A stretch of DNA of 44,470 nucleotides from Octopus bimaculoides (taxonomy: Eukaryota): NCBI RefSeq assembly GCF_001194135.2, contig NC_068992.1, positions 33,125,382 through 33,169,851 of the forward strand, given 5' to 3'. Shown one piece after another: positions 120 to 44,223 of this stretch. Below the pieces are notes generated by a model. The model saw only the letters and a list, made by a program, of their open reading frames with translations. It made no database searches and was not told the DNA's origin. Within the stretch, counting starts at the first letter, position 1. The number at the start of each line of letters is the position of its first letter. Position numbers and translations under genes: made by a program.

Positions 120-309
120 TATTGGCTAAAGACCTCTCTAGAGTATGGAGGAAGAAAGGACTCCATTACTCCATGTCAACAGAAGGAATTGTCTCTGCTT
201 GGCTATCAATTGCTGATGTCAACAAAGGGGATTGTATCCCTTTGGCTCTCAATCGCTGTTGGCCCTGTTCCAATGAACCCATGGGTTCCAATAGGCTAGC
301 AGGAATTAC

Positions 310-610
310 CTGAAATGTAAGCACAGTCTGAAGACCTCCATTCTGAAGTTCAAGATGTTCCTTGGGTCAAGGAATCTTTTAAGGTCCTCACCCATTCTGC
401 TATGCATAATTTGCAATGATTGGTCCCTTTAATGTAGGGGCCTGGAGTTTCTAGGATTCTCCATGATATGAAATCCCATTGTCTATCAGCTGCCATACAT
501 AGCTGGCTAATGATGCAACGAATCTCCTTTCTGGCATTCTGAAGGAGGATCTGTGGTTGGGGAGGCAATGTTTGAATGAGTTCCAGAAACAGCTAGTGTA
601 TTTCCATGGA
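310..610 (-). pseudogene. Degenerate GIY-YIG endonuclease C-terminal part of a Penelope-like element
   Basis: Frameshifted peptides KYTSCFWNSFKHCLPNHRSSFRMPERRFVASLASYVWQLIDNGISYH and SWRILETPGPYIKGTNHCKLCIAE resemble the PLE endonuclease tail. They are paralleled by SLAKHVWHLKEK...INWTILEKATPY...CNLRLTEK at 37215-37415. Confidence 0.75.
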
Positions 611-820
611 CAGGTGTTGGCAGTGGTGTGTCTGTTGGTGTTGGTGTCACTACCACCACTGTTGCTGGAACTGGCACTGTTGGTGCTGTCGCTGCTGGTG
701 CTGGCATCATTGAAGGTGGTGATGGTGTTGGTGCAGGTGTTGGTAAAGATGCCACTGTTGTTGTTGACATTGAATAATGGACTCCTGTTCTCCTCCATTA
801 CTAGAGAGGCCTTTAGCCAA

Positions 821-3320: not shown

Positions 3321-4497
3321 TTGGATCATCCTATAAACAATGAAGTTTTTTCAATTGCATGAACTAAAAGTTGGAGGGGGACAAGTTAAACTACATGCAT
3401 CAACTTGCCATAAAAGCAGGTAATAATTTTACCTTGCCCTTATTATTAGTGCAAGTTTTGAAGAGTGCAGTTTGATTTTAACAGTTATTTTTTTCAAAGC
3501 TATAGTGGAAATGACAAAGGAGCATATTTGGCATATTTTGCTTTATGAGTTCAATAAAGGCAACAACGCAATGGAAAGTATGAGGAATATTAATGCAGTA
3601 TATGGGAATTGGTCAATAAATGCAAGCCAGTGTCAACGGTGGTTTCAGAAATTCTGAGCTGGAAACTACAGCCTAGAAGATGAGGCTCATCCTGGAAGAT
3701 CTGTAGAGCTCAACAAAGACGTCCTAGTGGAACAAAATCCCATTGGAACCAGCAGAGAAGCTTGGATTTGGTCATTCAACCATTTATCAACAACTGTATG
3801 CCATCAAAAAAGTCAGCAAGTTGGGTCAATGTGTTCTTCACAAACTTTCCAAATCTAATCTCACACAGAGAGTGAATATGTGTTCTTCTTTGTTGTCACA
3901 TCTCATGAATGAACCATTTTTGGACCGAATAGTAACTGGTGACAAGAAATGGGTTCTCTATAAAAATGTCAAGCACCGCAGACAGTGGGTATGGAAAGGA
4001 GAAACACAGCATCTCAGTCTACAGGGGGTCTTCACCCATGTAAGGTGTGGTTATTTGTTTGGTGGGATATAAAATGTTTAGTCCACTTTGAACTTTTAAA
4101 GCCAAACCAAGCGATAACAAAGGAGATCTACTGTGAGTAGTTAGAAGAAAAACAACTATCTTTGGTTTCAAGACAAAAGGTGTTCTATCAGGATAATGCT
4201 TGACCACATACAGTGAGGATAACATTCCAAAGGGTAGAGCAAATTGAAGGGGAAACGATGCCCCACTCATCATATTCACCAGACATTGCCCCATCTGATT
4301 ATCATTTATTCTGCAGTCTTCAAAATCATTTGGATGAAAAAATATGAATTCTGTAGATGAGATCAGAACAGTACTGGAGGAGTACTTTTCATCACGGAAT
4401 TTTGGAAGAGGGGCCTTGAAGGTCTACTGGATAAATGGAAGAGCATTGTAGAAAATGAAAAAGAGAGTATATTTTAAATTTAAAAAGTACTTTGTTT
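3321..4497 (+). mobile_element. Degenerate mariner transposon (Mos1/Hsmar1-like DD34D), right TIR missing
   Basis: Motifs KEHIWHILLYEFNKG, FLDRIVTGDKKWVLYKN, QDNA and YSPDIAPSDYHLF. The 5' end follows a TA. Multiple stops and frameshifts. Confidence 0.9.
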
Positions 4498-6199
4498 AAG
4501 ATATATAAGCACCGGTACAGCTAGACAATAACCAAAATAACAATATAGAAAACAAAAATTATATTTAAGCCTATATATAGAGGCCCACTGACTTGCTTTT
4601 AAAACAGTTGCAGTGGAACTGCATCAGTGACCAGGTAGCAGTTAGTGTGACAAAACTTTTGTCTCCAAATAATAAGTGTTTAACTGAAGTTAGCATTTGT
4701 GTGCTTTTAAATGGCTAATATGTTTTCCATGCTATAATTGCTTATAATCAATTATTTTACAAGTGCTAATATAATTACTAAATAGTTAATTCTTATATTG
4801 AATCTTTATTATAGCATAAGACCTGTTATTGAACAAGAGTGTCATAATCATCAACCAAATCATTTAAAGTATGTTTTTCATGCTGATGTGGGTTGAACAG
4901 TTTGAGGGAATTCAATTAACTGAATGGTTGCATCATACTCCAATTACTGAATTGGCATGGTTTCTATAGGGACTAACCTTTGTTTCTTGAATCAAGTGTG
5001 TAAAATAGATTTATGTATTTGTATATGTTTTTCCAACCATGGAGAAATAGAAAATTTCTTTCTCTGAGAAATTTGAAATTAAAACTAAGAAATATGAATG
5101 AAATACAGTAATGTATTTATTTTGATGTTCTATTTTTGTCTTATTTTTAACATTGATTACTAACTTAGGCACAAGTCCAAGTTGTGTGAACAAGAAAGTG
5201 AAATGTTTGATTAGCTATAATTTGTAGCTGGGTCCCTGTGAAATATTCTCATTTATTACGGGGATATAAGCAAAGTCTGAAGAGTAAAAGTTATTGTTCT
5301 CCAGGCCATTGTCTTTTTATAAAGTGAAGTGATTTTTTTTCTGTTGTGGTCCAACTTTGTGTCAAAGATTTCACTTCTCCAGATCTTAAGCTTACTTTAC
5401 AGGTCTTTCACAGATTTTATATTAATACAACTTTTAATTAAAGTGTGATAGGGTTGAATTACAGAACTGGTAGAGTAAATGTCACCATATGTGATCTTTG
5501 TTGAATTCTCTGTGAGACTGATTATAACTATCTTTCCCCCCAGGGTCAATTTAGTCTGCTTTAACCAGTCTGGTTCTGATAGAGAAAATCAATATCACTG
5601 ATAATTGATTTTACTTTTGTCATATAGTTTAATTAATTTTAATTCTGTTTCTTTGTGCAGATACATTTTTGTTATGTAAATTATATTCACCTCTAATGTA
5701 GGGGTTTAGTTATTGTAAAGTAAAATGCATACATCAAAGAGCTTAACATTAATCTTACTATCAGTTTGAATCTCTATAGAATATTCATTTAGTAAACAAG
5801 AATTTTTCTCATAGAGTACTACAGGGCTCTATTTTTCAACCAGTTGTCTTTCTAATATTCATTAGTTACTTATATGTTGCTCTAAATGATGTATTAGGCA
5901 TTGATTTGATAAACGATATGTAATATCAATGCATCATTTATAATTATATGTAATAGAACTAATAACAATTAATAATAGAACTAATTACAACTAAAATACT
6001 TTATAGAACAGAGTATATGTTACTTTATCACGAGCAGGAAACAATTCTTTGCTATTAGTTATTGAAATGTTGATCTTACTTTGTAAAAATATTAGATATA
6101 TTGGACTTGTAAATGATGAGAGCCTGGATTAGAATGCACATAATGACAGAGCGACAAGCAACTTAATTTCACAGATATATATTTGAAAGAGCTATTCTG

Positions 6200-8663: not shown

Positions 8664-11600
8664 CATGATGATGGCCATCCACTCGTGACCGAGGAAGACC
8701 ATTGCCGACCTTCAGGAACATTGTGCGCTCTAGGAGTAACTTATATTTTGCATTTGCAGATCCACAACTGCAAACATTGCAGATTAAGCTTTCCCCATTC
8801 ACTATTTGAGCCGTGCACATTAAATTTTTCATGCTGGATACGTGCTCTCTCAAAAGTGTCGATCCCCTCCTTAACCTGCTTCCTCCATCCATGGCGATGA
8901 CAGGCATTGTTCTCCCAGTCAGTGTCCTTCATATCACAAGCCTTTAATGAGGACTTGACACAGTCCTTAAAGCGCNNNNNNNNNNTCACAAGCCTTTAAT
9001 GAGGACTTGACACAGTCCTTAAAGCGCAGCCTTGGTTTCTGCCGGAGTCTCCTTCCGTTCACAAGTTCTCCATATAGCATCTGCTTAGGAATCCTGCTAT
9101 CCTTCATTCTAATAAGGTGTCCAGTCCAATGTAACCGCTGCTTGTGCACCATCGCCTGAATACTCAAGATATCAGCTGTCCTCAGGATCTGTGTGTCAGG
9201 AATTTTTGAGGTCCAGCCAACATTGAGAATGTGCCTGAGACATCTCTGATGAAAACGTTCAAGAACCCTTACCTGACGTTTGTACAGAGTCCATGTTTCA
9301 CACGAGTAGAGGAGCGATGTTAGTACACAAGCACGGTACACAGCAACTTTTTTTTGCCCTGCTATGCCATGCTGGGACCAGACACGAGACTGAAGAGACC
9401 GGAAGGAATTAGTTGCTCTCTGCAACCTAAANNNNNNNNNNNNNNNNNNNNNNNNNNNNNNNNNNNNNNNNNNNNNNNNNNNNNNNNNNNNNNNNNNNNN
9501 NNNNNNNNNNNNNNNNNNNNNNNNNNNNNNNNNNNNNNNNNNNNNNNNNNNNNNNNNNNNNNNNNNNNNNNNNNNNNNNNNNNNNNNNNNNNNNNNNNNN
9601 NNNNNNNNNNNNNNNNNNNNNNNNNNNNNNNNNNNNNNNNNNNNNNNNNNNNNNNNNNNNNNNNNNNNNNNNNNNNNNNNNNNNNNNNNNNNNNNNNNNN
9701 NNNNNNNNNNNNNNNNNNNNNNNNNNNNNNNNNNNNNNNNNNNNNNNNNNNNNNNNNNNNNNNNNNNNNNNNNNNNNNNNNNNNNNNNNNNNNNNNNNNN
9801 NNNNNNNNNNNNNNNNNNNNNNNNNNNNNNNNNNNNNNNNNNNNNNNNNNNNNNNNNNNNNNNNNNNNNNNNNNNNNNNNNNNNNNNNNNNNNNNNNNNN
9901 NNNNNNNNNNNNNNNNNNNNNNNNNNNNNNNNNNNNNNNNNNNNNNNNNNNNNNNNNNNNNNNNNNNNNNNNNNNNNNNGTAAGAAGAATATTTGCCAGA
10001 ACCTTGCCAGCAGCTGATAATAGAGCAATACCTCTGTAGTTACCACACATTGTTCTGGCTCCTTTTCCTTTATATAGAGGAAGAATAATTGCATCCTTCC
10101 AGTCCTTAGGGATTGCACCATCCCTCCAAACTGCACTAATAAGTTCATGAAGGGACTGTGTGATGTAATTACCACCAAATCGCAAGACCTCAGCACAAAT
10201 TCCATCCTTTCCAGGTGCCCTACCAAGATTCAATTTACTTAATGATGTCATTACTTCATCTTCTGAGGGCGAAGAGTCTAAGGAGCCAATGATAGGTCTT
10301 TGTTACATAGTATCAATTACAGTTTCATCCACAACTGACTCAAGGTTTAGGAGTTCAGAGAAGTATTCGATCCAGCGACCTGTGATTTCTGTTGATTTAG
10401 TAAACAGGGTGTAAGATTCCTTGGAAAGCAAAGGAGCTGATGTGGAGCTCTTAGGTCCATAAGCTTGAATCATAAGATGGTAAAGCTTCTTGCTGTCATT
10501 TGCATCAGCAGCAGCCTGAACATCACGAGCAAGATCTTCCTACCAAGTGTTCTGCATCTTCCTGAGAGATTGCTGCAGTAGTGATTTTACACTGCTATAG
10601 TAAGCAAGTACTAGATTTTACTGCACAACAGAAAGTCCTCTGTGTAGCAATACATTGTGGGCATGGCGCTTTAGCACCAATAGTCACTGAACTTCAGCAT
10701 CATTCTCGTCAAACCAGTCTCTGTGTCTGGCAGTAACATATTCCAGGGTTTTGGCTGCACATTGTAGAACCTGGTCTCGAAAATCCTCCGATGCTGCAGC
10801 AGTTTCAATGCTGGACAAGCGAGTCTGAAGTTCTTTCCTAACCACAACATCATATACCTTGTGGACATTTACACGGCGAGGAATGCTGACTGGTCCTCTT
10901 CTCTCTTTTACTCTAATTACCATTCGGAACTTTGCTCGCACCAGACTGTCCATCATTCCGATCCATGGAAGGACTTGACATTACAAATGTCATAAATGTC
11001 GCACTTGCAGATGATGACATAATCCAGCAAGTGCCAAACTTTGGACCTTGGATGCATCCATGTTGTTGCGTGATCACCTTTGTGCATAAAATGAGTGCTT
11101 GCAATGTAAAGTCCATGTTCTTTGCAAAGCTCCAGTAGCATGAGACCATTGCTATTCATTTTCCCTACTTCAAAACGTCCTAGAGAGTTCCATGTTTACC
11201 AGTCTGTTCCAGTTCGGGCATTAAAATCCCCCAGTAGAATGACTTTATCAGAATTGGGGATTTTCCTAAGTATGGCTCTCAGCTGGGTATAAAACATTGT
11301 TTTATCTTCATCACAGCTAGTCAAAGTAGGTGCATAGGCACTTATTAGAGTAGCAAACTGCTTACCTTTCAAGTGCAACTGTAGCATCATTATACGTTCA
11401 TTTATAGGAACAGGGAGCTCTTCCAACTTCTTAAGGATATCAGATCGGACAGCAAAACCAACACCAACCTCTCTGCACTCCTCCTTCTGCCTTCCTTTCC
11501 AAAAAAAAGTGTATCCACCTCCTACTTCCTCAAGCTAACCATCACCTTCTATACGAGTCTCTGAGAGTGCAGCTATATCAATTTTATAATGGTTCAGCTC

Positions 11601-14102: not shown

Positions 14103-15936
14103 ACAACTTCAAGATCAGGGCTAAATGGATGCCCAGAAGTAGACCAGCTTGGAGGAGAAGGGTCTGGAAGCTTAAAGATCCTGCAAATGAACAGAGATTT
14201 AGAGACATATTACTTGAAGCCTTCGACAAAATAGAAGGGGATATAGCTTCACTTAATGTGGAAGACAACTGGAGGTTTCTATGGGACAACCTGCTGAGGG
14301 CCACTGACCCGATCTGTGGATGGTGCAATGTCCCCTCACTACCCAAAATAAAGTAGTGGTGGAACAATGTTGTTGACAGGGCTATTAGACAAAAGAAACA
14401 GGTTTGGAAGGACTGGAAGAACAGTGGTAGCAGGGAATTGTATCAGACTGCTAGAAGGGAAGCTAGGAGACAGGTTTATTTAGCCAGAGGGGAAGCAGAT
14501 AAGATTAAATTTGCCAATGTTCTGCACCGTGAGGATCAAAGACTTGAGGTATTTCATGTTGCAAGACAGTGTGTGAAAAGAATCATGATGTCGTAGGAGA
14601 GAAATGTATCTGCATGGATGATGGCTCATTTGCACTAAACGAGGCAGCAAAGAGAGAGGTTTGGAGACGCCACTATGAAAGGTTGCTTTATAAAAACAAT
14701 GGATAGGAGAAAGAGCGTTGGCCGAATGTCAACCCAACAGAGGGACCAGCTATTCTAATTGACAGTACCTTGGTAGATAAAGCAATCAAGAGGATGAAGA
14801 CAGGGAAAGCCGCCCGGACCATCAGGAATCACTGCAGAGATGCTCAAAATATCTGATAGTGTTGGCAATAGCCTAGTCACCCATAGAGTTAATCAAGTGA
14901 TACACGAAGGAGTCATACCCAATGACTGGTGTAGCAGCACCATAGTCAACTGCTACAAAGGTAAAGGTGACGCTTTAGACACAAATAATTACAGAGGTAT
15001 CAAGCTTTTGGATCAGGTAATGAAAGTCACAGAGAGGGTCATAGCCCAACTAATTAGGGAGAGAATCAGCTTAGATGAGATGCAGTTTGGGTTCATGCCA
15101 GGGAAAAGCCCCACTGATGCTATATTTCTGGTAAGACAGCTGCGGGAGAATATACCTAGCTAAAGATAAACCTCTGTACCTGGTTTTTGTTGACATGGAG
15201 AAAGCCTTTGATAGGGTCCCCCGATCCCTTATCTGGTGGTCAATGAGGAAACTAAGGATAAATGAATGGTTAGTGAGAGCTTTGTGAGCCATGTACAGGG
15301 ATGCCTTCAGTAAGGTGACGGTTGGCAACAAGTACAGTGAAGAATTCCGGGTAGAGGTAAGGATCCACCAAGGTTCAGTCCTCAGCCCCCTCCTATTTAT
15401 CATAGTCCTTCAGGCAATAACAGAGGAATTCAAGACAGGATGCCCCTGGGAGTTCCTCTATGCTGATGACCTTGCTCTAATTGCTGAGTCACTATCAGAA
15501 CTAGAGGAGAAGTTTCAGGTGTGAAAGCAAGGATTAGAATCGAAGGGCCTTATTGTCAACCTAGCTAAAACCAAAGTCCTAATAAGTAGAAAGGCAGACA
15601 AACTACAAACCCCTTCAGATATATGGCCCTGCTCAATCTGTAGAAAAGACATAGGTAGAAACTCTATAAGATGTACCCAGTGTAAGCTATGGACACATAA
15701 GAGGTGCAACAATATCAAAGGAAGGCTAACTTGCAAGATAGTTTTTGTAAGTGGCAGATGCTCAGGAGTAATAAACTCTGAAAATGTGCAGAGAACAACA
15801 TCTTCCACATTCCAGGGAGAAAAACTAGAGGTAGTTGATAGCTTCTGCTACCTAGGTAACCAAGTCAGTAGCGGGGGAGGGTGCGCTGAAAGTGTAGCTG
15901 CTAGAATAAGAATAGCCTGGGCAAAGTTCAGAGAGC
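14103..15936 (+). mobile_element. RTE LINE RT fragment (second family), truncated at both ends
   Basis: Motifs KGKGDALDTNNYRGIKLL, QFGFMPGKS, DMEKAFDRV, HQGSVLSPLLF, LYADDL, VDSFCYLG; several stops and frameshifts. Confidence 0.95.
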
Positions 15937-19472: not shown

Positions 19473-20521
19473 TCATTTCCTTATTCTGTTACTTGAATGT
19501 GTAGTTTCAATTTGTTTGGGTGTTGGTACCTCAAATGTGTCGTTCAATACTTTCATGGGGATTTCATCTCCCATGACCATTTCTGCCATACATCTTTTTT
19601 TAAGTTGGTTTATATGTCTTTTATGTTTTAAATTTTTTCCTTTTACCAAGAATAATATTTTTGCACCATGAAGTATATTTACCACCTAAGTGTAGTTGAC
19701 CCATAGGGGACGATGCTACTGTGCTGCTACTGTTTACATCTCACTCACAGGCTTGTTATTGAATATTTTTGCAATTGTTTAATTACTACACTATCCTCCC
19801 AGCTTTCTTTACCATGTCTATACAATTTTTTAAAAAACCCCAAAACCTGTCACGTATCTTGAAGGATTTTGAAGTATATTTGTTGTTAGGCATTTTTCTT
19901 CTTTTACTCAGTGTCAACTTATCAAAGACGGATCTGATTTTTCTAGCAAAATTAATTCCGCAAGTGACATTCCAGATGGATTATTTGGATTAGATGTTTC
20001 TAGGTACACTCTTAGAAATTGTTGGAAGTGTTAGGTCATCCATTGCTTCATTGTTCACCTTTTTTTAAAGCCTTCTTAAAAGTGTTAACAAAACACTCTG
20101 CCTGTCCATTTGACCTAGGATGATACTGTGGAGTGGCCACATGTTCAATAAAAAACCTTTTACAAAATTCTTTAAACTCATCTAAAGTGAACTGAGTTCC
20201 ATTATCAGACACAATGGTGTCTAGAATACCATATCTAGTGAACATTACCCGTAAAAATTTTACTGTAACCACAGATGTTGGCTTTTCACACATATGTGCT
20301 TCAGGCCACTTTGAAAAACTGTCCACCACAACAAGATAATATGAACCCTTAAGTGCCCCTGCATAATCAACATACAGTCTGGACCATAGAATATGTTTTG
20401 GCCATTTTGTGGTAGGTGATTTTGCTGCTAGCTCACAACCTCTACATGCTTTCACTAGTTCTTCAATGTCATTGTCTATTCTTGGCCAGTACACTTAACT
20501 TCTTATTAACGATCTCATCCT
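19473..20521 (-). pseudogene. Gypsy integrase remnant (part of the H2C2 zinc domain, rve core, C-terminal tail)
   Basis: RMRSLIRS*VYWPRIDNDIEELVKACRGC, WSRLYVDYAG, LVVVDSFSKWPE, IVSDNGTQF, PQYHPRSNGQAE, HKRHINQLKKR. Confidence 0.9.
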
Positions 20522-21362: not shown

Positions 21363-21639
21363 CCATCTTTTTCAATCTATCTATCCATATACTTTCCTAC
21401 ATTCAATCATTGTGGAAATAGAACCCAAATGACTTGTCCAGTTAAAACTACAGCAATCCATAGGTGTTATATTTTCCTTTCAACAAACTGTGTGGTAATA
21501 GGAGTAAATTAAGTTAATGACTCATATTTTAATGATTTCCCATCCCCAAATTTGTTTTACTCTATAATTAAATTTTCAATACTGCTTATCTAAATATTTT
21601 TGAAGCTCACTGGGGGTCACTAATTACTAAGAGTGTATA

Positions 21640-22766
21640 TGCAGTGAGTGAGTACATAAGGAGTGAGTGTGTATGGAATGAGTGCATATGGAATGAGTGT
21701 GTATGGAGCTAGTGAATGCGTATGGAGTGAGTGTCTATAGAGTGAGAAAGCGCATATGGAGTGACTAAGTGTGTATGGAGTAAGTGAGTGCATATGGGGT
21801 GAGTGTAAATGGAGTTAGTGACTGCATATGCAGTAAGTGCGTATGGAGTAAGTGAGTGCATATAGACTGAGTGTGCATGAAGCAAGTGAGTGTATATGGG
21901 GTGAGAGACTGCGCATGGAGTGAGTGCATATGGAGTGCCTGAGTGCATATGGAGCAAGTGAGTTTGTAAGGAGTGAGTGTATATGGAGTGAGTGTGTGCA
22001 TTTAGCATGTGTGTGTAAGAAGATAGTGAGTTCATATGGAGTGAGTGAGTGTGTATAGTGTAAGTGAGTGCATATGGAGTGAGTGAGTGAATGCATATGC
22101 AGTGAGTTTGTATAAAAAATGAGAGCATATGAAGTGCGTGTGTATGTAGTGAGTACATATGGAGTGACTGCATATGGAGTAAGTGCATATGGAGTGAGTG
22201 CATATGAAGTGAGTGTATTTAGAGTGAGTGCACATGGAGTGAGTGGGTGCATATGGAGTGTGTTTGGAGTGAGTGAATGTGTATTGAGTCAGTACGTATG
22301 AAGTAAGTGAGTGCATATAGAGTGAGTGTGTATGCAGTGAANNNNNNNNNNNNNNNNNNNNNNNNNNNNNNNNNNNNNNNNNNNNNNNNNNNNNNNNNNN
22401 NNNNNNNNNNNNNNNNNNNNNNNNNNNNNNNNNNNNNNNNNTATGGAGTGAGTGTATATGGAGTTAGTGAATACATATGGATTGAGTGCATGCATATGTT
22501 GTGAGTGCATATGCATGAGTGTGTAGTGAGTGAGTGAGTGTTTATGGAGTGAGTGAGTGTTTATGGAGTGAGTGAGTGGATATGGAGTGAGTGAGTGGAT
22601 ATAGAGTGAGTGAGTGTTTATGGAGTGAGTGAGTGGATATGGAGTGAGTGAGTGGATATGGAGTGAGTGAGTGGATATGGAGTGAGTGAGTGGATATGGA
22701 GTGAGTGAGTGTTTATGGAGTGAGTGAGTGAGTGTGCATATGAAGTGTTTCTGGAGTGAGTGCATA
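21640..22766. repeat. Imperfect GAGT-based minisatellite (15-bp and 19-bp units)
   Basis: GGAGTGAGTGCATAT-type units on the left and TGGAGTGAGTGAGTGGATA units on the right; includes a 100-N gap. Confidence 0.9.
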
Positions 22767-35730: not shown

Positions 35731-37500
35731 AACTGTGATAATAAGGGTATCAGCTTCAGTCTAGTAAAGCTTTGCTTTCTTACGATCTCTTGCATACATC
35801 CTTTTGTGGCTGGCACGTGGTGCAATATGCCCCAGATTATATTATGCAAGAAGTAAACAGGGAGTAAGGGGCTGAAAAATTTTGTTGTTCAGTAGAAACC
35901 CCAAAGGTAGACTAATCAACCTAGCTAAAACAGAAATAGGCATTATTAGCAAAAATATTTTAGATTCTATTTTAAACAAGCTAAATAGAGAATTAAATTT
36001 ATGGATTTGGGGAAATAGTAAGTCAGTTATAGATTGGTTCAAGGGAATTAGCCATAAATGTAACTTCAAATTTACACAGTTCAATATTGTCCATTTTTAC
36101 CCATCAATATTCAGGCCTTTACTTCTTAAAGCATTAGACTTCACCAAGCAACACGTTACCATCAACAGCTTGGATATAGATATTATCTTGCAAGCAATGA
36201 AATCCCTCATTTTTTACGATGATTCCACCTGGATCAAAAAGAATGAGGATACTTTATTCGTTGTGCTGATGGAGGCATAAGATGGGGCAGAGTTATGTAT
36301 GCTTATAGGAGCTTATATTTTGCATAACCTGCATCTGGAATTCCCTTTTATGGATACAGGATTATACAGGGTTGACGGTCTTATAGTCACCCATAATATG
36401 AACGGCCATGAGAAGTTAGACTTAGGGAGAAACTTATTGTTTTCGTCCAAAGAATTGGCTTACAGATAATGATAAATACTAACCTGAAAAATGTAGATTT
36501 TTTTTAGATATTAACTTAAATTTGCAATTAGATAAATTTAACCCTACCGTAAGCCTAATGAAAAACTTTATTAGATTAACAAAGAATTAAATCATCCACC
36601 CGTACTATTTAAAAATTTAGTGAGTAATATAGGAAGGCACTTATCAATCCATATCTTCAGATGAGTTAGCATTTCAAAATGTTGTGTCATATTATAATAA
36701 TGCATTAAGGAACAGCAGATTCTCAGAGAAGATCCAGTATGGTCAAAGCACTACTAGCAATAATAGAACATGTAGAACTAGAACTAAGAAAATGCTATGG
36801 TTTAATCTGGCATTTAACACTGCAATAAAAACTCATATAGGTAGAGAATTCTTGAAACTAGTTTCTAGGCACTTTCAAGAAAACCATAAACTCTATAGAA
36901 TGTTTAATAGAAGAGCATTAAAGATTAGCTATTCTTGTCACAAGAGCTTCACCTCTTTAATCAACTAGCAGAACACAAAAACTATTAGAAGCAACCACAG
37001 TGCCCAAAATTACAAGAAGAATTGCAATTGTAATGACCAAAGTTGCTGTCTGCTAGGAGGAAATTGTCTTGAGAAAGGAAGTGTTTATAGAGCTAAGGTG
37101 CAAATAGAAGGCTCACAAGAATATGAAATGTATACAGGAGCTTCAGAAAATTCCTTTAAAACTAGATTTTATTCCCACTGAAATTCATCTTGATGCCCCA
37201 AAAATAGGACAGCAATGAGTCTTGCCAAACATGTCTGGCATTTGAAAGAAAAGGATACTCATCCTTTCAATATTAACTGGACGATCTTGGAGAAAGCTAC
37301 ACCATATCAATATGGAGCATATAGACGCCCGGTGAGGTGTAATTTGCGCCTGACTGAAAAGTTCTTCATCCCGTTCCAGGATAAATATGCATTGAACCAA
37401 AGACAAGAGCTTTGAATTCCTGTAGACATGCTGCAAGGTATAAAATATTGAGTGATCAAATACCGTATGGATAATATTTCACTTTTGCATCTGAATTTGG
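35731..37500 (+). mobile_element. Penelope-like retroelement, RT + C-terminal GIY-YIG endonuclease, degenerate
   Basis: RLINLAKTEIG, FTQFNIVHFYPSI, DGAELC, GLYRVDGL (YRDD catalytic motif mutated, 36365-36379), NHPP, WFN, CNC..CL...SVYRAKV...MYTG, SLAKHVWHLK. A T-rich 3' flank extends toward ~38.9 kb. Confidence 0.92.
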
Positions 37501-39046
37501 CTTTTCCACCTGAAAACAAGCATCATTTTGTATAATATTCATTGTACATTCATCACCTTTACATTTTACATTTTTCAACTTTCAACAAAACCTTCAACTG
37601 TTTACAAGTTTAAATTAAAATTTTGCCTGGGTCGTTTTCAAATTTAAATTTTAAATTTATAGTTTTTAAAAAATTATATTTTTTTTCATATTTACAATGC
37701 AATTAATTATATTACATTGATTTTTTGCACCATTTTCTTATTTTCATATTCAATACACCATACAATTTTTAATATTTTTGTATGTGTATATATGTATATA
37801 TGCATGTATTAATGTTTGTATGTTTAGTGTTTACATGTATGTACATATTTTTTTTTGTGTATATGTTTAAGTAAATGTTAGTATGTNNNNNNNNNNNNNN
37901 NNNNNNNNNNNNNNNNNNNNNNNNNNNNNNNNNNNNNNNNNNNNNNNNNNNNNNNNNNNNNNNNNNNNNNNNNNNNNNNNNNNNNNNNNNNNNNNNNNNN
38001 NNNNNNNNNNNNNNNNNNNNNNNNNNNNNNNNNNNNNNNNNNNNNNNNNNNNNNNNNNNNNNNNNNNNNNNNNNNNNNNNNNNNNNNNNNNNNNNNNNNN
38101 NNNNNNNNNNNNNNNNNNNNNNNNNNNNNNNNNNNNNNNNNNNNNNNNNNNNNNNNNNNNNNNNNNNNNNNNNNNNNNNNNNNNNNNNNNNNNNNNNNNN
38201 NNNNNNNNNNNNNNNNNNNNNNNNNNNNNNNNNNNNNNNNNNNNNNNNNNNNNNNNNNNNNNNNNNNNNNNNNNNNNNNNNNNNNNNNNNNNNNNNNNNN
38301 NNNNNNNNNNNNNNNNNNNNATTTATTATTTTTGATTTCTTTTCTTTTTCTTTTACTTTTTCTAACTTGCAACATCATAGTTGTGCATTTAGAATATATG
38401 CACAGAGACGTATGATGTGTATATATATGTATGTAGATACCTATATATACATTAGTATATATATTTACTTTTATATTTTGTTTGTACATGTTTGTATATA
38501 TGTATATATGCATGTATTAATGTTTGTATGTTTAGTGTTTACATGTATGTACATATTTTTTTTTGTGTATATGTTTAAGTAAATGTTAGTATGTGTTAGT
38601 ATGTGTGTATATTTTTATGTTGTTTAGATCTTTGTAAGTGAATATTTTATTATAAACAAACATATTTTTAATTAAATTTATTTTACCATTAATTAATTTA
38701 CTTTGGGTATACATGTTATTTCCTTCTAGCTAAAGCTAATTTTTGATTTAATGTTTTCTTTGATTTTAAATAATACGATTTTTAAATTGTAATTTTAATT
38801 TTATGTACATCACTAGTTCTTAAAAAGACCGTTAGTTGAAAGGACCAATCAAACAAAACAATTTCAAATGTGTATCTGTCAATGAAAATTGTATATTTAT
38901 ACATATAACCTTAATTTTTTGTTCCATTCTCAACCAAAACTGTCTGGTGAACAGGAACGTGAATCTCTGAGTAACAGCTTTTTTGTGATATTTTTGTGAT
39001 GATTTTATGATGATTTTCCAGCTTTAATAATAAAGTATGTAGATAT

Positions 39047-41600: not shown

Positions 41601-41996
41601 TTTTGAGTGCTCGAAGTGTTAAATAGATTGCTCGGAAACAAATTTGAAAGCTCGAAAAGATACTTCCTCATATTCTGACTAATTTGAATGCTCTCAACAG
41701 ACATTTTGATTTGAATGATGTAAATGCTAAATTCTTTGACTGAGTGCGGAATTGAATGACCGAAAAACGAATTTGAAAGACTAACTTCATGTTGCTAACA
41801 TTTTTCACGACTTTGAATGACTCGATTATCAAACTGGAAGACAAACGTACGAAAATGACTGCAAAAAACCTATACTACACTTTTCACGGAAAACAGGGGT
41901 GGGTGGAACACTCAGAAATCCCCACCACAACCTCAGTGGGGGTGGGGTGAACTGCATATCCTAGTTTTCTAGTTACCCTTCACCACTGATATCTAC

Positions 41997-42052
<56 letters not shown>

Positions 42053-42062
42053 ATCTATATAT

Positions 42063-42092
<30 letters not shown>

Positions 42093-42097
<5 letters not shown>

Positions 42098-42442
42098 AAA
42101 TCTCTGAACGAGGTATTAACAGTAACTGCACGACAAGGTGAAGTATATTTGCCACTTAAATGTGGCTGACCCCTAAGGGTGGATGTTACTGTTGCTTTTA
42201 GCCCCAGGAGAACATCTCCTCCAGCTGGCTATTGACACACATCTGTGTCCTGTCTGTATTTGCAAAGGGAAGTCATCCTTCTCATCTTGATCTGCGATAT
42301 GTACGGACTCAAGTTTCTGGGTATTTACCCGTCCTCAGCATACGACAATCACCGACCTTCGATGCGAAAAATGTTCCAATACAAATACGTATATCTTTTT
42401 CCAGTGAAATTATTCACTGATCTCGAAAAAGTGAAAACAAGC
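42093..42442 (-). mobile_element. 350-bp HHR-bearing non-coding monomer (retrozyme/pLTR-like), copy 1
   Basis: Exactly one monomer length, inverted and circularly permuted relative to 42458-42835; abuts (TA)n on the left. Confidence 0.8.
42300..42344 (-). ncRNA. Minimal type I hammerhead ribozyme (copy 1)
   Basis: Minus strand reads CGTATG-CTGAGGA-C GGGT AAAT ACCC A-GAAA-CTTGAG-TC-CGTACA. Confidence 0.75.
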
Positions 42443-42457
42443 CACCTTTAAGTGGCA

Positions 42458-42833
42458 ACATTTAAGTGGCAAATATACTTCACCTTGTCGTGCAGTTAGT
42501 GTTAATACCTCGTTCAGAGATTTAACATTGCTTGTTTTCACTTTTTTGAGATTAATGAATAATTTCACTGGAAAAAGATATATGTATTCGCATCGGGATA
42601 TCTTTCACATCGAAGGTCGGCGATTGTCGTACGCTGAGGACGGGTAAATACCCAGAAACTCGAGTCCGTATGTATTGCAGATGAAGATGGGAAGGATGAC
42701 ATCCCTTTGCAAATACAGACAGGACACAGATGTGTGTCAATAGACAGCTGGAGGAGATGTTCTCCCGGGGCTAAAAGCAACAGTAACATCCACCCTTAGG
42801 GGTCAGCCACATTTAAGTGGCAAATATACTTCA

Positions 42834-42835
<2 letters not shown>
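42458..42835 (+). mobile_element. 351-bp HHR-bearing monomer plus 27-bp terminal direct repeat, copy 2
   Basis: ACATTTAAGTGGCAAATATACTTCACC occurs at 42458-42484 and 42809-42835; abuts (TA)n on the right. Confidence 0.8.
42628..42672 (+). ncRNA. Minimal type I hammerhead ribozyme (copy 2)
   Basis: CGTACG-CTGAGGA-C GGGT AAAT ACCC A-GAAA-CTCGAG-TC-CGTATG. 6-bp stem I, palindromic stem III ACTCGAGT, GUC triplet, predicted cut after 42666. Confidence 0.85.
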
Positions 42836-42875
<40 letters not shown>

Positions 42876-42933
42876 TACAAACATACATACATACATATAT
42901 AGATATGTGTGTGTGTGTGTGTGTGCGTACACA

Positions 42934-44223
42934 CGAGGGGTGTTCATTAAAGATTTCTCCTGACCCACTTCTGGTTATTGCAGGAAACACAACTTGTACA
43001 GGTATAATTATACATGTCTCTACATATCACATGTACATTTCAAATTTCCACTGGTATTCATTTGTCTTTTATGGCTGCCGAAGTGGACTAAAGTGTTATA
43101 ATGAGGCAGTTGAATGCAGATCAGTGATCAGGTTCTTACACTTGAAATGTCGTACACCAAAAGAAACTTTTAATGAAATGAAAGAAGTTTATGGTGGCTA
43201 TGCACCATCATACGATGTAGTCAAGCCCTGGCGTCACCAGTTCAGATGTTGTTGGACATCGATGGAAGCTTCTCCTATTCTTGGATGACCACATTCTGCC
43301 ATTGATAACAGTACCTTCCATAAAGTGGAAGCTGCCAATTTGGAGGATTGCTACATAACTATTCAGCAGCTAGCCTAAGAAGAGAAGATAAATGTAGAGT
43401 CCATGGAAAAATCATTCACGACCATTTGCACATGCAGAAGTTGTCTGTACAATGGATTCCCTGGATGCTCACACCTTTTCAGAAGCAGGAATGAGTCAAT
43501 TTCTCTAAGGCACTTTTGGCAATGTTCCAAGAAAACAAGGAAGACTTTTATGGCAGACTTATCAAATAGGATGAAACATGGGTTCATAACTATTTTTCTG
43601 AGACTAAAGCCCACTTGAAGCAATAGATGCATGATAACTCACCACCTCTGAAGAAGGCTCATGTCCAACCTTCAGCAGGCAAGGTGATGTTCACTCTCTT
43701 TCGGGACCAGTATGGATTAGTGATGATGGATTTTCTGGCAAAGGTACCACATTAACAGGGCATATTATGCTTCTCTGCTGCAGAAATTGCAGGATGCCAT
43801 CAAAATAGAGAGGCATGGCATGCTGACCAAAGGAGTCCGCCTCCTCCAAGACAACACCACAATTTACAATGTACATGTTCCCCAGATGAAAGTACACTCC
43901 GGAAGCTATGAAATACATCCTCCTCCCCCTTACTCTCCCAACCTCGTACCATCTGACTTCCACCTCTTTCCAACCATGAAGTCTTTTTTGAAGGGGAAGC
44001 ACTTTCAGACAATGATGAACTTATTTCCAGAGTAAAGTCTTCGCTCCCGACACAACCTACCAACTCCTATGGATGAGGTCTTCACAACTGCACAAAGCAA
44101 TGGGAGAAATGTGTCACCATTGGTGGTGGGTATGTAGAGAAGGACTAATATATATTTTCCAAGTTTTGTTTATCTCAGTACTTGGGAAGTGAGTCAGAGC
44201 AAATCTTTAATGAACATTCTGCA
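42934..44223 (+). mobile_element. Full-length (~1.29 kb) degenerate mariner, irritans-like
   Basis: TIR core TGTTCATTAAAGATTT..C.TGAC.CACTT at both ends. Motifs WIPWML, DETWVH, LLQDN, YSPNLVPSDFHLF; stops and frameshifts. Confidence 0.92.

What the first reader, a model, noticed from the sequence alone, without database searches (positions are those of the whole stretch)
42093..42835. Circularly permuted, head-to-head pair of a ~350-nt hammerhead-ribozyme monomer: candidate octopus retrozyme copied from a circular RNA
Seen: define A=42093-42136, B=42137-42163 and C=42164-42442. The locus reads A-B-C | junction | rcB-rcA-rcC-rcB. Copy 1 is exactly one monomer (350 bp). Copy 2 is one monomer (351 bp) plus a 27-bp terminal redundancy and starts at a different point of the same circle. 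Each copy carries an HHR, neither has a credible ORF, and neither end coincides with the HHR cleavage site. Established: metazoan non-LTR retrozymes and PLE pLTRs are short HHR-bearing repeats, and retrozymes give circular RNAs. Inference: variable start points plus slightly-more-than-one-round length are expected from reverse transcription around a circular RNA, probably by a Penelope RT in trans. I cannot tell whether this family is already catalogued.
Basis: partly seen in the sequence, partly recalled or inferred. Interest (0 to 1): 0.85.

Follow-up and report, generated by a model that had tools for sequence, protein, structure and literature searches.

The report
Ribozyme-carrying Penelope-type retroelement insertion, octopus
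This is one old insertion of a short, non-coding, hammerhead-ribozyme-carrying retroelement that was pasted into a TA microsatellite in the two-armed, head-to-head way typical of Penelope-like elements; it is a new example of a known kind, and nothing in it requires a circular RNA.

Summary
Window 42093-42836 holds two diverged (about 93% identical), head-to-head, circularly permuted copies of a ~350-nt non-coding unit. Both copies keep an intact type-I hammerhead core.

I recovered two more loci of related families from Octopus bimaculoides chromosomes (L004, L006). Both have the same architecture as the window locus:
- The two arms meet at their 5' ends, and their sense 3' ends face outward.
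- One arm always ends at ...CTT(C/T)AC(C/T)T.
- The other arm always ends 39-44 nt further on, at ...GAGATTTAA.AT.
- The 5' ends vary from locus to locus.
- Two of the three loci lie in (TA)n. The third is flanked by a ~13-bp target-site duplication, which shows that the arm pair is a single insertion.

Two fixed reverse-transcription start sites 30-40 nt apart (the "tail"), extension of both target strands, partial tandems and (TA)n targeting are the published hallmarks of Penelope-like element (PLE) integration. The "permutation" therefore comes from two fixed start sites on a repeated template, not from scattered start points on a circle.

A PLE enzyme acting in trans is well supported. A circular RNA template is neither needed nor excluded. 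The element is best called a non-autonomous PLE derivative, that is, an animal "retrozyme". It is a new member of a known kind and of modest interest.

The parts
41990..42094 (.). Left half of the target microsatellite: (TATC)n running into (TA)n, abutting the outer (3') end of arm 1
   Evidence: TRF rows 41989-42094 and 41990-42052. Pure (TA)n run at 42065-42094. Sequence read directly.
42093..42442 (-). Its sense strand is the - strand. It spans exactly one unit (profile positions 1-346). Its 3' end at 42093/42094 faces the left (TA)n and its 5' end lies at the centre.
   Evidence: nhmmer profile hit 42442-42094 (-), hmm 1-346, E = 5e-103.
42093..42136 (-). This is the stretch between the inner and outer 3' termini, and it occurs as a terminal extension only on arm 1.
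   Evidence: Alignment of the arm ends from three loci. The matching tails in L004 and L006 are 40 and 39 nt.
42292..42352 (-). Hammerhead-like motif of arm 1. The core is intact, loop 3 reads CUUGAG, and C17 lies at 42306.
   Evidence: Descriptor scan and fold. No Rfam hit even when only 91 nt are searched.
42443..42454 (.). Centre junction where the two 5' ends meet. It contains a 14-nt slip duplication of the GCCAC...GTGGC hairpin region (42445-42472). No TA repeats lie between the arms.
   Evidence: Direct-repeat family D2. Sequence read directly.
42455..42836 (+). Its sense strand is the + strand. It spans 1.08 units: profile 274-346 followed by 1-304. Its 3' end at 42836 faces the right (TA)n and carries no tail.
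   Evidence: nhmmer hits 42455-42527 (hmm 274-346) and 42530-42836 (hmm 1-304). Also.
42455..42485 (+). The 31-nt terminal redundancy of arm 2, which is the end of the preceding unit. Its twin lies at 42806-42836 (1 mismatch).
   Evidence: Direct-repeat family D3.
42620..42682 (+). Hammerhead-like motif of arm 2. Helix I has 5 bp, an internal loop (UGU on the 5' strand, a single U on the 3' strand) and 6 bp, followed by the CUGAGGA box. Helix II has a C.A mismatch at its base, then either 3 G-C bp with a UAAAUA loop or, if U-A also pairs, 4 bp with an AAAU loop. The GAAA box follows. Helix III has 2 bp and a UCGA loop. Predicted cleavage is after C at 42666.
   Evidence: Rfam Hammerhead_1 scores 17.9 bits (gathering score 34), full-length alignment 42628-42672. 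Fold.
42836..42906 (.). Right half of the target microsatellite: (TA)n running into (CA)n and mixed repeats
   Evidence: TRF row 42836-42906. Pure (TA)n run at 42836-42867.

Best explanation
The locus is a single, old, complex insertion of a ~350-nt non-coding retroelement that carries a type-I hammerhead motif. It is a non-autonomous derivative of Penelope-like elements, the class called animal non-LTR retrozymes. A PLE reverse transcriptase/GIY-YIG endonuclease supplied in trans installed it.

Proposed mechanism:
1. The enzyme nicked both strands of a (TA)n microsatellite.
2. Each 3'-OH primed reverse transcription on element RNA. One primer started at the inner site (...ACUUCACCU) and the other at the outer site 43-44 nt downstream (...GAGAUUUAACAU).
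3. Each cDNA ran towards the RNA's 5' end for about one unit. The template was longer than one unit or was re-entered, which explains the 31-nt overlap in arm 2.
4. The two 5' ends were joined in the middle.

The result is two arms with their 3' ends outward and a phase offset equal to the 'tail'. This reads as a circular permutation.

Shown: the architecture, the two fixed 3' termini, the variable 5' ends, the single-event nature, the microsatellite target and the absence of coding capacity.

Inferred: the identity of the enzyme, the dual priming and the topology of the template.

The locus itself has only one sense ribozyme per strand, so it cannot release unit-length RNA by double self-cleavage. 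It is an end product of transposition, not a source of circles.
For: (1) Same architecture in three independent loci. These are the window, L004 (O. bimaculoides CM046618.1) and L006 (CM046612.1). In each, the arms are head-to-head with their sense 3' ends outward.

(2) Fixed 3' ends and variable 5' ends. In profile coordinates:
- Window: inverted arm 1-346; direct arm 274-346 then 1-304.
- L004: inverted arm 179-346; direct arm 26-346 then 12-307.
- L006: inverted arm 266-346; direct arm 170-306.
Every locus therefore has one arm ending at 346 and one ending at 304-307, with 5' ends that differ.

(3) A single event. L006 is flanked by CATTTTTGAACTAT on one side and CATGTTGAACTAT on the other, a target-site duplication of about 13 bp. 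No TA repeats lie between the arms in the window.

(4) Microsatellite target. Both ends of the window locus and of the L004 locus abut (TA)n. Pure (TA)>=8 runs cover only 1.1% of the window.

(5) Published PLE properties match each of these features.
- PLE insertions form partial tandems, carry an adjacent inverted 5'-truncated copy, have a 30-40 bp tail at one end, and prefer (TA)n (PMC8557442).
- Purified Poseidon PLE nicks and extends both target strands.
- It starts reverse transcription at two adjacent internal RNA sites. [quoted passage not shown]
- It uses unprocessed RNA as substrate (PMC11167929).

(6) The element is non-autonomous. The unit has no ORF. No PLE coding sequence lies within 3.7 kb to the left or 1.6 kb to the right. 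The tandem period in L004 is only 336-348 bp.

(7) Retrozyme-like RNA features. GC content is 42%. The circular fold has z = -3.7 and -5.8 in sense, with about 63% of bases paired. The hammerhead core is intact in both arms.

(8) Possible partners. Hydra-clade-like PLE relics are frequent in the same DNA, with at least 6 fragments in about 197 kb. According to PMC8557442, this clade targets (TA)n and carries hammerheads.
Against: - Only three loci (plus one decayed fragment) could be examined. L004 and L006 belong to related families, only 70-78% identical to the window unit over its 3' half, not to the same family.
- No autonomous PLE sharing the unit's 3' end was found. The 3' flanks of the Hydra-like relics show no similarity to the unit.
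- The hammerhead scores below Rfam's threshold and has a C.A mismatch at the base of helix II, so its activity is unproven.
- The L004 copies have a decayed core (UUGAUGA), and the L006 arms are truncated before the motif.
- The differences between the arms are unevenly spread: 20 of the 24 lie in one half of the unit. A single event followed by neutral decay does not obviously predict this.
- Substitutions show no significant structure-preserving bias.
Confidence: 0.75

Rival explanations
1. The cDNAs were made by reverse transcription around a covalently closed, ribozyme-processed circular RNA (rolling-circle reverse transcription). This would give a once-round arm and a slightly-more-than-once-round arm.
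For: - Arm 1 is exactly one unit long (profile 1-346) and arm 2 is 1.08 units.
- Arms longer than one unit, including 1.75 units in L004, need a repeated or circular template.
- The unit RNA is predicted to be highly self-paired when folded as a circle.
- Circular RNA as the transposition intermediate is the published model for animal retrozymes (PMC7229834; the 2026 preprint 10.64898/2026.07.22.740005).
Against: - The start points are not variable. They are the same two sites in all three loci.
- Arm lengths in L004 and L006 (about 0.2, 0.4, 0.5 and 1.75 units) show no preference for one round.
- In vitro, a PLE uses unprocessed linear RNA, and hammerhead cleavage is dispensable (PMC11167929).
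- A linear read-through transcript of a tandem source, or a template jump, gives the same DNA.
- No scar or end lies at the cleavage site, so the sequence does not discriminate between the models.
Confidence: 0.2
2. The locus is an ordinary pseudo-LTR fragment of an autonomous Penelope-like element, not an independent non-coding element.
For: - PLE pLTRs carry hammerheads and form tandem and inverted structures (PMC8557442).
- Hydra-clade-like PLE relics lie 4.7 kb upstream in the window (35876-37412). In L004 one lies 1.3 kb from the related locus, at 3326-4633.
Against: - None of the three loci is contiguous with PLE coding sequence.
- The repeat period is 336-351 bp, so a full repeat unit holds no ORF.
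- The 3' flanks of the PLE relics show no similarity to the unit.
- The PLE relics are frequent enough (about 1 per 33 kb) that their proximity is expected by chance.
Confidence: 0.04
3. The head-to-head pair arose secondarily, either from two independent insertions into the same microsatellite or from inversion within a tandem satellite array.
For: - The arms are 7% diverged and their differences are unevenly distributed.
- (TA)n is a reusable target.
Against: - No TA repeats separate the arms.
- An inversion with one breakpoint in the flank would place microsatellite sequence between the arms.
- The same arrangement, with the same tail / no-tail asymmetry, recurs in L004 and L006. In L006 a single target-site duplication brackets both arms.
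Confidence: 0.04
4. The locus is an assembly artefact of a gap-rich scaffold, or a Pol III SINE mobilised by a LINE.
For: - The window has eight N-gaps, and complex PLE insertions are known to trouble assemblies (PMC8557442).
- Octopus genomes are rich in SINEs (PMC13282606).
Against: - The arms differ at 24 sites, so the pair is not a collapsed or duplicated read.
- The architecture recurs in the chromosome-level assembly GCA_001194135.2.
- There is no tRNA-like head and no poly(A) or LINE-type tail. The inverted partner and the tail are not SINE features.
Confidence: 0.02

Closest known systems
Animal non-LTR retrozymes (Cervera & de la Pena 2020, PMC7229834; Li, Clavereau & Pollet 2026 preprint 10.64898/2026.07.22.740005)
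   Same: - The unit is about 350 nt, non-coding and low in GC (42%).
- It carries a type-I hammerhead with a 2-bp helix III capped by a tetraloop, as described for invertebrate retrozymes.
- The RNA is predicted to be highly self-paired.
- Partial tandems occur.
- A link to PLEs has been proposed for this class.
   Different: - This locus is not a tandem array with two or more ribozymes in one orientation, so it cannot itself release circles.
- It is a head-to-head pair.
- Expression and circularity are untested.
- The hammerhead has a C.A mismatch at the base of helix II and scores below Rfam's threshold.
- I found no report of this class in cephalopods.
Penelope-like element insertion architecture: pLTR partial tandem, inverted 5'-truncated copy and 30-40 bp tail (Craig et al. 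2021, PMC8557442; Frangieh et al. 2024, PMC11167929)
   Same: - An inverted arm lies next to a direct partial tandem.
- 5' truncation is variable.
- The 39-44-nt tail occurs on one arm only.
- There are two fixed reverse-transcription start sites.
- Two of three loci lie in (TA)n, and the third has a target-site duplication of about 13 bp.
- A hammerhead motif is present.
   Different: - There is no RT/GIY-YIG ORF. The whole unit is 350 nt, against 2.5-4 kb for autonomous PLEs.
- The autonomous partner is unidentified.
Non-autonomous Chlamys PLE derivatives such as MRC1 of Chlamydomonas (PMC8557442)
   Same: [quoted passage not shown]
   Different: - They are in a different kingdom and a different PLE clade.
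- They have no hammerhead.
- They share 3'-end similarity with known autonomous families, which could not be shown here.
L1 twin priming (recalled from memory; not checked here)
   Same: Both target-site 3' ends prime cDNA synthesis, which gives an inverted segment joined 5'-to-5' with a direct segment inside one target-site duplication.
   Different: The L1 arms copy adjacent parts of a linear, non-repeated RNA, and one arm starts at the poly(A). Here both arms start at defined internal sites of a repeated unit.

Membership tests
Hammerhead ribozyme, type I (Rfam RF00163) | Conserved core: the CUGANGA box, the GAAA box, the A15.1-U16.1 pair and a cleavable NUH triplet | tested here: met
   CUGAGGA ... 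GAAA ... GUC is present and identical in both arms.
Hammerhead ribozyme, type I (Rfam RF00163) | Three helices around the core, with helix I open | tested here: inconclusive
   - Helix I: 6 bp, an internal loop, then 5 bp.
- Helix III: 2 bp and a tetraloop.
- Helix II: 3-4 bp, but with a C.A mismatch where G10.1-C11.1 is usual.
- All five arm-to-arm substitutions in helix I keep pairing. Over the whole fold there is no significant structure-preserving bias.
Hammerhead ribozyme, type I (Rfam RF00163) | Covariance-model score at or above the curated gathering threshold (34 bits) | tested here: not met
   No hit at window or 1.1-kb scale. Arm 2 scores 17.9 bits, E = 0.03, when only 91 nt are searched. 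Arm 1 gives no hit.
Hammerhead ribozyme, type I (Rfam RF00163) | Self-cleavage at the predicted site | not testable with these tools
   This needs in vitro transcription of the unit.
Animal non-LTR retrozyme | Short (150-450 bp), non-coding, low-GC unit without LTR, PBS or PPT | tested here: met
   The unit is 350-351 nt with 42% GC, and the longest open frame is 76-84 codons.
Animal non-LTR retrozyme | Head-to-tail tandem repeats, each unit carrying a type-I hammerhead | tested here: inconclusive
   The window has only 1.08 units in one orientation, with one hammerhead per orientation. The related L004 locus has 1.75 units holding two decayed hammerhead relics.
Animal non-LTR retrozyme | Expressed as unit-length linear and circular RNA | not testable with these tools
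   No octopus transcriptome was reachable. Exact-ORF and translated searches found nothing.
Animal non-LTR retrozyme | Highly self-paired unit RNA | tested here: met
   The circular minimum-free-energy fold has z = -3.7 and -5.8 in sense and -3.1 and -3.2 in antisense, with about 63% of bases paired.
PLE-type insertion (non-autonomous PLE derivative) | An inverted 5'-truncated copy adjacent to a direct copy or partial tandem, with 3' ends outward | tested here: met
   Seen in 3 of 3 loci.
PLE-type insertion (non-autonomous PLE derivative) | A 30-40 bp 'tail' at one end, i.e. two adjacent fixed reverse-transcription start sites | tested here: met
   The tails are 43-44, 40 and 39 nt long. In all three loci one arm ends at profile position 346 and the other at 304-307.
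PLE-type insertion (non-autonomous PLE derivative) | Microsatellite (TA)n target bias, with a target-site duplication of variable length where it can be discerned | tested here: met
   The window and L004 loci lie in (TA)n. L006 has a target-site duplication of about 13 bp.
PLE-type insertion (non-autonomous PLE derivative) | Sequence similarity of the 3' end to an autonomous PLE of the same genome | tested here: inconclusive
   There is no similarity to the 3' flanks of five Hydra-like PLE relics. These relics are decayed, and no octopus PLE library was available.
Autonomous Penelope-like element | An ORF encoding a telomerase-like RT and a GIY-YIG endonuclease within the element | tested here: not met
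   The unit has no ORF, and the flanking frames give no RT or GIY-YIG hits.
SINE (Pol III head, LINE-dependent tail) | A tRNA/5S/7SL-derived head and a poly(A) or LINE-like 3' tail | tested here: not met
   ARAGORN finds no tRNA-like sequence. The 3' ends are ...CACCU and ...UUAACAU, with no A-tail.

The most novel reading that the evidence does not exclude
In all three loci one arm starts at the inner site and the other at the outer site; no locus has two arms of the same type. If this holds genome-wide, a single PLE ribonucleoprotein would use its two adjacent start sites in a coordinated way, one for each nicked target strand. These start sites are so far known only from an in vitro study of a lizard Poseidon element. 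The template could be one repeated or circular RNA. These very short non-coding passengers would then serve as a natural, high-copy read-out of the still poorly understood PLE integration mechanism, including whether circles are used as templates.
Probability: 0.2. Interest if true: 0.55.

Novelty: new member of a known kind. Interest (0 to 1): 0.3.

Why it matters
Animal retrozymes have been linked to Penelope-like elements mainly through co-distribution and pLTR similarity in vertebrates. This locus and its two relatives add independent structural evidence from a mollusc. The ribozyme-bearing short repeat carries the integration scars that are specific to PLE enzymes: the tail, dual-strand priming and the (TA)n target. 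That supports PLE-dependent mobilisation.

The result also carries a caution. Permuted or slightly-longer-than-unit copies of such repeats are not in themselves evidence for a circular RNA template.

Practically, the family seems abundant in octopus. Outside the window there were 2 related loci in about 153 kb, but this is a very rough figure. The family is probably hidden among 'unclassified SINE' or unknown repeats.

Tried and rejected
- Rfam at the gathering threshold on the whole window and at E <= 10 on 1.1 kb gave no hammerhead. It gave only sub-threshold miRNA-like hits caused by the long inverted repeat and the microsatellites. I dismissed these as generic hairpin matches.
- Searches for further copies failed by several routes: an exact ORF look-up, a translated frame against the protein database, two metagenome scans and one viral scan with conserved DNA patterns, and an exact look-up of the neighbouring integrase ORF.
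- What worked was fetching octopus genomic DNA around annotated homologues of that integrase and searching it with BLAST and nhmmer. No copies were found in L005 or L007-L010.
- I tested whether the arm-to-arm substitutions preserve RNA structure. They do not differ from random placement (7 pairs broken against 7.5-8 expected). There is therefore no evidence for selection, or for two selected source RNAs.
- I tested whether the unit is the 3' end of the Hydra-like PLE relics. There is no similarity.
- A snap-back or hairpin-primed palindrome is rejected because the arms are not mirror-symmetric about the centre.
- A simple inversion and two independent hits are rejected on geometry and on the L006 target-site duplication.
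- The Pfam, PDB-sequence and Rfam checks on the Hydra-like element were uninformative. Its assignment rests on the motifs described in PMC8557442.
Full report
**1.

The repeat finder reports two inverted pairs: 42136-42451 / 42521-42836 (316 nt, 92%) and 42093-42166 / 42455-42528 (74 nt, 97%). BLAST of copy 2 against the window gives E = 1e-130 and 2e-31 for these pairs, and the pairwise alignment agrees.

- Arm 1 is 350 nt.
- Arm 2 is one 351-nt unit plus a terminal redundancy that I measure as 31 nt with one mismatch.
- The arms differ at 24 positions: 19 transitions, 4 transversions and 1 indel. Ten are CpG-linked.
- There is no credible ORF. The longest open frames are 76 to 84 codons.
- Both outer ends abut (TA)n.

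**2. The hammerhead**

Rfam finds nothing at window scale or in a 1.1-kb search. When only 91 nt around the motif are searched, arm 2 gives a full-length alignment to Hammerhead_1 at 17.9 bits, about half the gathering score. Arm 1 gives nothing.

My own descriptor required the CUGANGA and GAAA boxes, a cleavable UH dinucleotide (position 16.1 = U, position 17 not G) and three helices. It hits only these two sites plus one chance-like site. Shuffled windows give 0.11 hits on average, and 165 kb of other loci give none.

The anatomy of the motif, read 5' to 3', is as follows.
- Helix I has 5 bp, an internal loop (UGU on the 5' strand opposite a single U on the 3' strand) and 6 bp.
- The core box reads CUGAGGA.
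- Helix II reads C-GGG-UAAAUA-CCC-A. It has the usual 4+6+4 layout, but a C.A mismatch sits where G10.1-C11.1 is normally found.
- The GAAA box follows.
- Helix III has 2 bp and a tetraloop. The six nucleotides between A15.1 and U16.1 read CUCGAG, a palindrome, in arm 2 and CUUGAG in arm 1.
- Cleavage is predicted after GUC, between 42666 and 42667.

A 2-bp helix III capped by a tetraloop is described as typical of invertebrate retrozyme hammerheads. A mismatch at the base of helix II occurs in the (weakly) active axolotl motif (PMC7229834). From memory, the 5 bp / 3-nt bulge / 6 bp helix I and the xAAAUA loop 2 resemble the Schistosoma and newt type-I motif. That resemblance is a lead, not a test.

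My judgement is that the motif very probably descends from a real hammerhead. Whether these two copies still cleave is open.

**3. The RNA**

Folded as a circle, the unit is much more stable than dinucleotide shuffles. The z-scores are -3.7 and -5.8 in sense and about -3.1 in antisense. GC content is 42% and about 63% of bases are paired. This fits the description of retrozyme RNAs.

A fair test is to take the structure from one arm and ask whether the other arm's substitutions keep the pairs. By that test the substitutions between the arms do not preserve structure beyond chance. Nothing therefore shows selection acting since the arms separated.

**4. Surroundings and organism**

- The right flank is a Mos1-type mariner relic.
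- The 3.7 kb to the left holds no recognisable coding sequence.
- At 35876-37412 (+) lies a decayed, 5'-truncated element whose homologues are P0001 to P0010 (33-35% identity). Two intact homologues, P0001 and P0004, have the DKT and RWK/RWR motifs. The CxCX5C linker and the C-terminal GIY-YIG domain without the CCHH cysteines are seen in both the homologues and the window relic. These traits define the Hydra clade of PLEs (PMC8557442, section 11).
- One homologue contig shows the PLE partial tandem with a period of about 2580 bp. Another has a hammerhead-like motif just after the ORF.
- The best named homologues of the window's Ty3/gypsy integrase ORF are from Octopus bimaculoides and O. sinensis, at 56-67% identity. 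An octopus origin is therefore plausible, though not proven.

**5. The decisive step: more copies**

Direct searches failed. I therefore fetched about 153 kb of octopus chromosome sequence around annotated integrase homologues and searched it with the unit. Two further loci of related families appeared, 70-78% identical over the 3' half of the unit.

- L004 has (TA)n, then an inverted arm of about 165 nt, then a direct arm of 1.75 tandem units with a period of 336-348 bp, then TA-rich sequence.
- L006 has an inverted arm of about 80 nt next to a direct arm of about 138 nt. It does not lie in a microsatellite. It is bracketed by CATTTTTGAACTAT and CATGTTGAACTAT, a target-site duplication of about 13 bp. 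The arm pair is therefore one insertion event.

| Locus | Inverted arm (profile positions) | Direct arm (profile positions) |
|---|---|---|
| Window | 1-346 | 274-346, then 1-304 |
| L004 | 179-346 | 26-346, then 12-307 |
| L006 | 266-346 | 170-306 |

(the alignment of the arm ends is.)

All three inverted arms end at ...GAGATTTAA.AT. All three direct arms end 39-44 nt earlier, at ...CTT(C/T)AC(C/T).. . The 5' ends in the centre differ from locus to locus.

**6. What this means**

This set of features matches the published hallmarks of Penelope-like element integration.
- PLE insertions are 5'-truncated and form partial tandems. They often carry an inverted 5'-truncated copy at the 5' side, have a 30-40 bp 'tail' at one end, and prefer microsatellites. 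(TA)n is the preferred target of the Naiad and Hydra clades (PMC8557442).
- A purified Poseidon PLE nicks and extends both target strands.
- It starts reverse transcription at two adjacent internal sites of the RNA. The tail is the sequence between those two start sites.
- It does not need hammerhead cleavage and uses unprocessed RNA (PMC11167929).

Both nicked strands priming on element RNA yields two arms with their sense 3' ends outward and their 5' ends meeting in the middle. Using the inner site for one arm and the outer site for the other gives a phase offset of one tail length. A template that repeats lets an arm run past one unit.

**7. Verdict on the interpretation**

The specific argument for a circular template does not survive.
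- The start points are fixed, not variable.
- The near-one-round lengths are a feature of this locus only.
The alternative criterion, adjacency to PLE coding sequence, is not met.

A circle is still possible. An arm longer than one unit needs a circle, a multimeric read-through transcript or a template jump, and the DNA product is the same in all three cases.

The locus has only one sense ribozyme per strand, so it cannot produce unit-length RNA by double cleavage. It is an end product of transposition.

**8. Alternatives considered**

- Snap-back palindrome: rejected because the arms are not mirror images about the centre.
- Inversion within a satellite array, or two independent insertions: rejected because no microsatellite sequence lies between the arms, the same asymmetric structure recurs, and a single target-site duplication flanks the L006 pair.
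- Ordinary pLTR of a neighbouring PLE: not supported. No locus is contiguous with a PLE ORF, the repeat period is about 350 bp, and the flanks of the PLE relics do not resemble the unit. Hydra-like relics are frequent, about one per 33 kb, so their nearness is unremarkable. They remain the most attractive candidate partners.
- SINE: rejected because there is no tRNA-like head and no A-tail.
- Assembly artefact: rejected because of the 24 differences between the arms and the recurrence in a chromosome-level assembly.

**9. Age, abundance and loose ends**

If the arms were identical at insertion, about 3.4% change per arm suggests an age of roughly 10 million years. This uses the rough calibration quoted for O. 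vulgaris repeats (PMC13282606) and is an inference only.

Two related loci in about 153 kb outside the window hint at thousands to tens of thousands of copies, with a very wide margin.

Three points remain unexplained.
- Twenty of the 24 differences between the arms fall in one half of the unit. CpG density accounts for about half of them.
- Every locus pairs one tailed arm with one untailed arm. This has a chance of 1 in 8 if the arms choose their start sites independently and with equal probability.
- Window arm 1 is exactly one unit long.

**10. Novelty**

The kind of element is known: animal retrozymes and non-autonomous PLE derivatives. I found no report of it in cephalopods. The combination of a retrozyme-like unit with the PLE tail signature is a useful but incremental addition.

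Noticed in passing
window 35876-37412 (+); also window 294-618 (-): These are decayed relics of Hydra-clade-like Penelope elements. [quoted passage not shown] Homologues P0001 and P0004 show the DKT and RWK/RWR motifs. The copy at 294-618 ends in the (TA)n at 1-34. Similar relics occur in L004 (3326-4633 -), L005 (16279-16726 +) and L010 (5803-7048 - and 7605-7763 +, a head-to-head pair).
   Followed up: partly
window 19529-19722 (-): A decayed, related copy of the hammerhead-bearing unit (profile 248-301, then 140-205). One piece ends at the same inner 3' terminus. It lies just downstream of the Ty3/gypsy integrase ORF at 20048-20494. A possible tail-bearing partner on the + strand at 19719-19750 is only weakly supported (E = 0.06).
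   Followed up: partly
window 42093-42836: The differences between the two arms are unevenly spread. Twenty of the 24 lie in the first 172 nt of the unit (the half that holds the ribozyme) and only 4 in the other 179 nt. CpG density explains about half of this.
   Followed up: partly
window 42445-42472: There is a 14-nt slip duplication (CCTTTAAGTGGCAA / CATTTAAGTGGCAA) at the centre junction, within the GCCAC...GTGGC hairpin that precedes the inner 3' terminus. L004 has a comparable small duplication (TGAAAACTAT, twice) at its own centre junction.
   Followed up: no
window 43080-44150 (+): A Mos1-type mariner transposase relic (an HTH_48 hit and weak DDE hits) lies immediately to the right of the locus.
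   Followed up: partly
window 37773-37886 and 38490-38600: Nearly the same sequence lies on both sides of the N-gap at 37887-38320. This suggests a collapsed tandem or an assembly problem at the 3' side of the Hydra-like PLE relic.
   Followed up: no
window 21631-22730: A large degenerate minisatellite of 15/19/34-nt units (GAGTGAGTGCATATGGAGT and variants), interrupted by a 100-nt gap.
   Followed up: no
window 8967-10251 (-), 14840-15163 (+): LINE-type reverse-transcriptase fragments. One is interrupted by assembly gaps.
   Followed up: no
L001 2268-2341 (+): A hammerhead-like motif (CUGAUGA, an 11-bp helix II, GAAAC, and a palindromic helix III CAAAUUUG) lies about 80 nt downstream of the 705-aa Hydra-like PLE ORF in a Logan contig. 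Rfam did not report it.
   Followed up: partly
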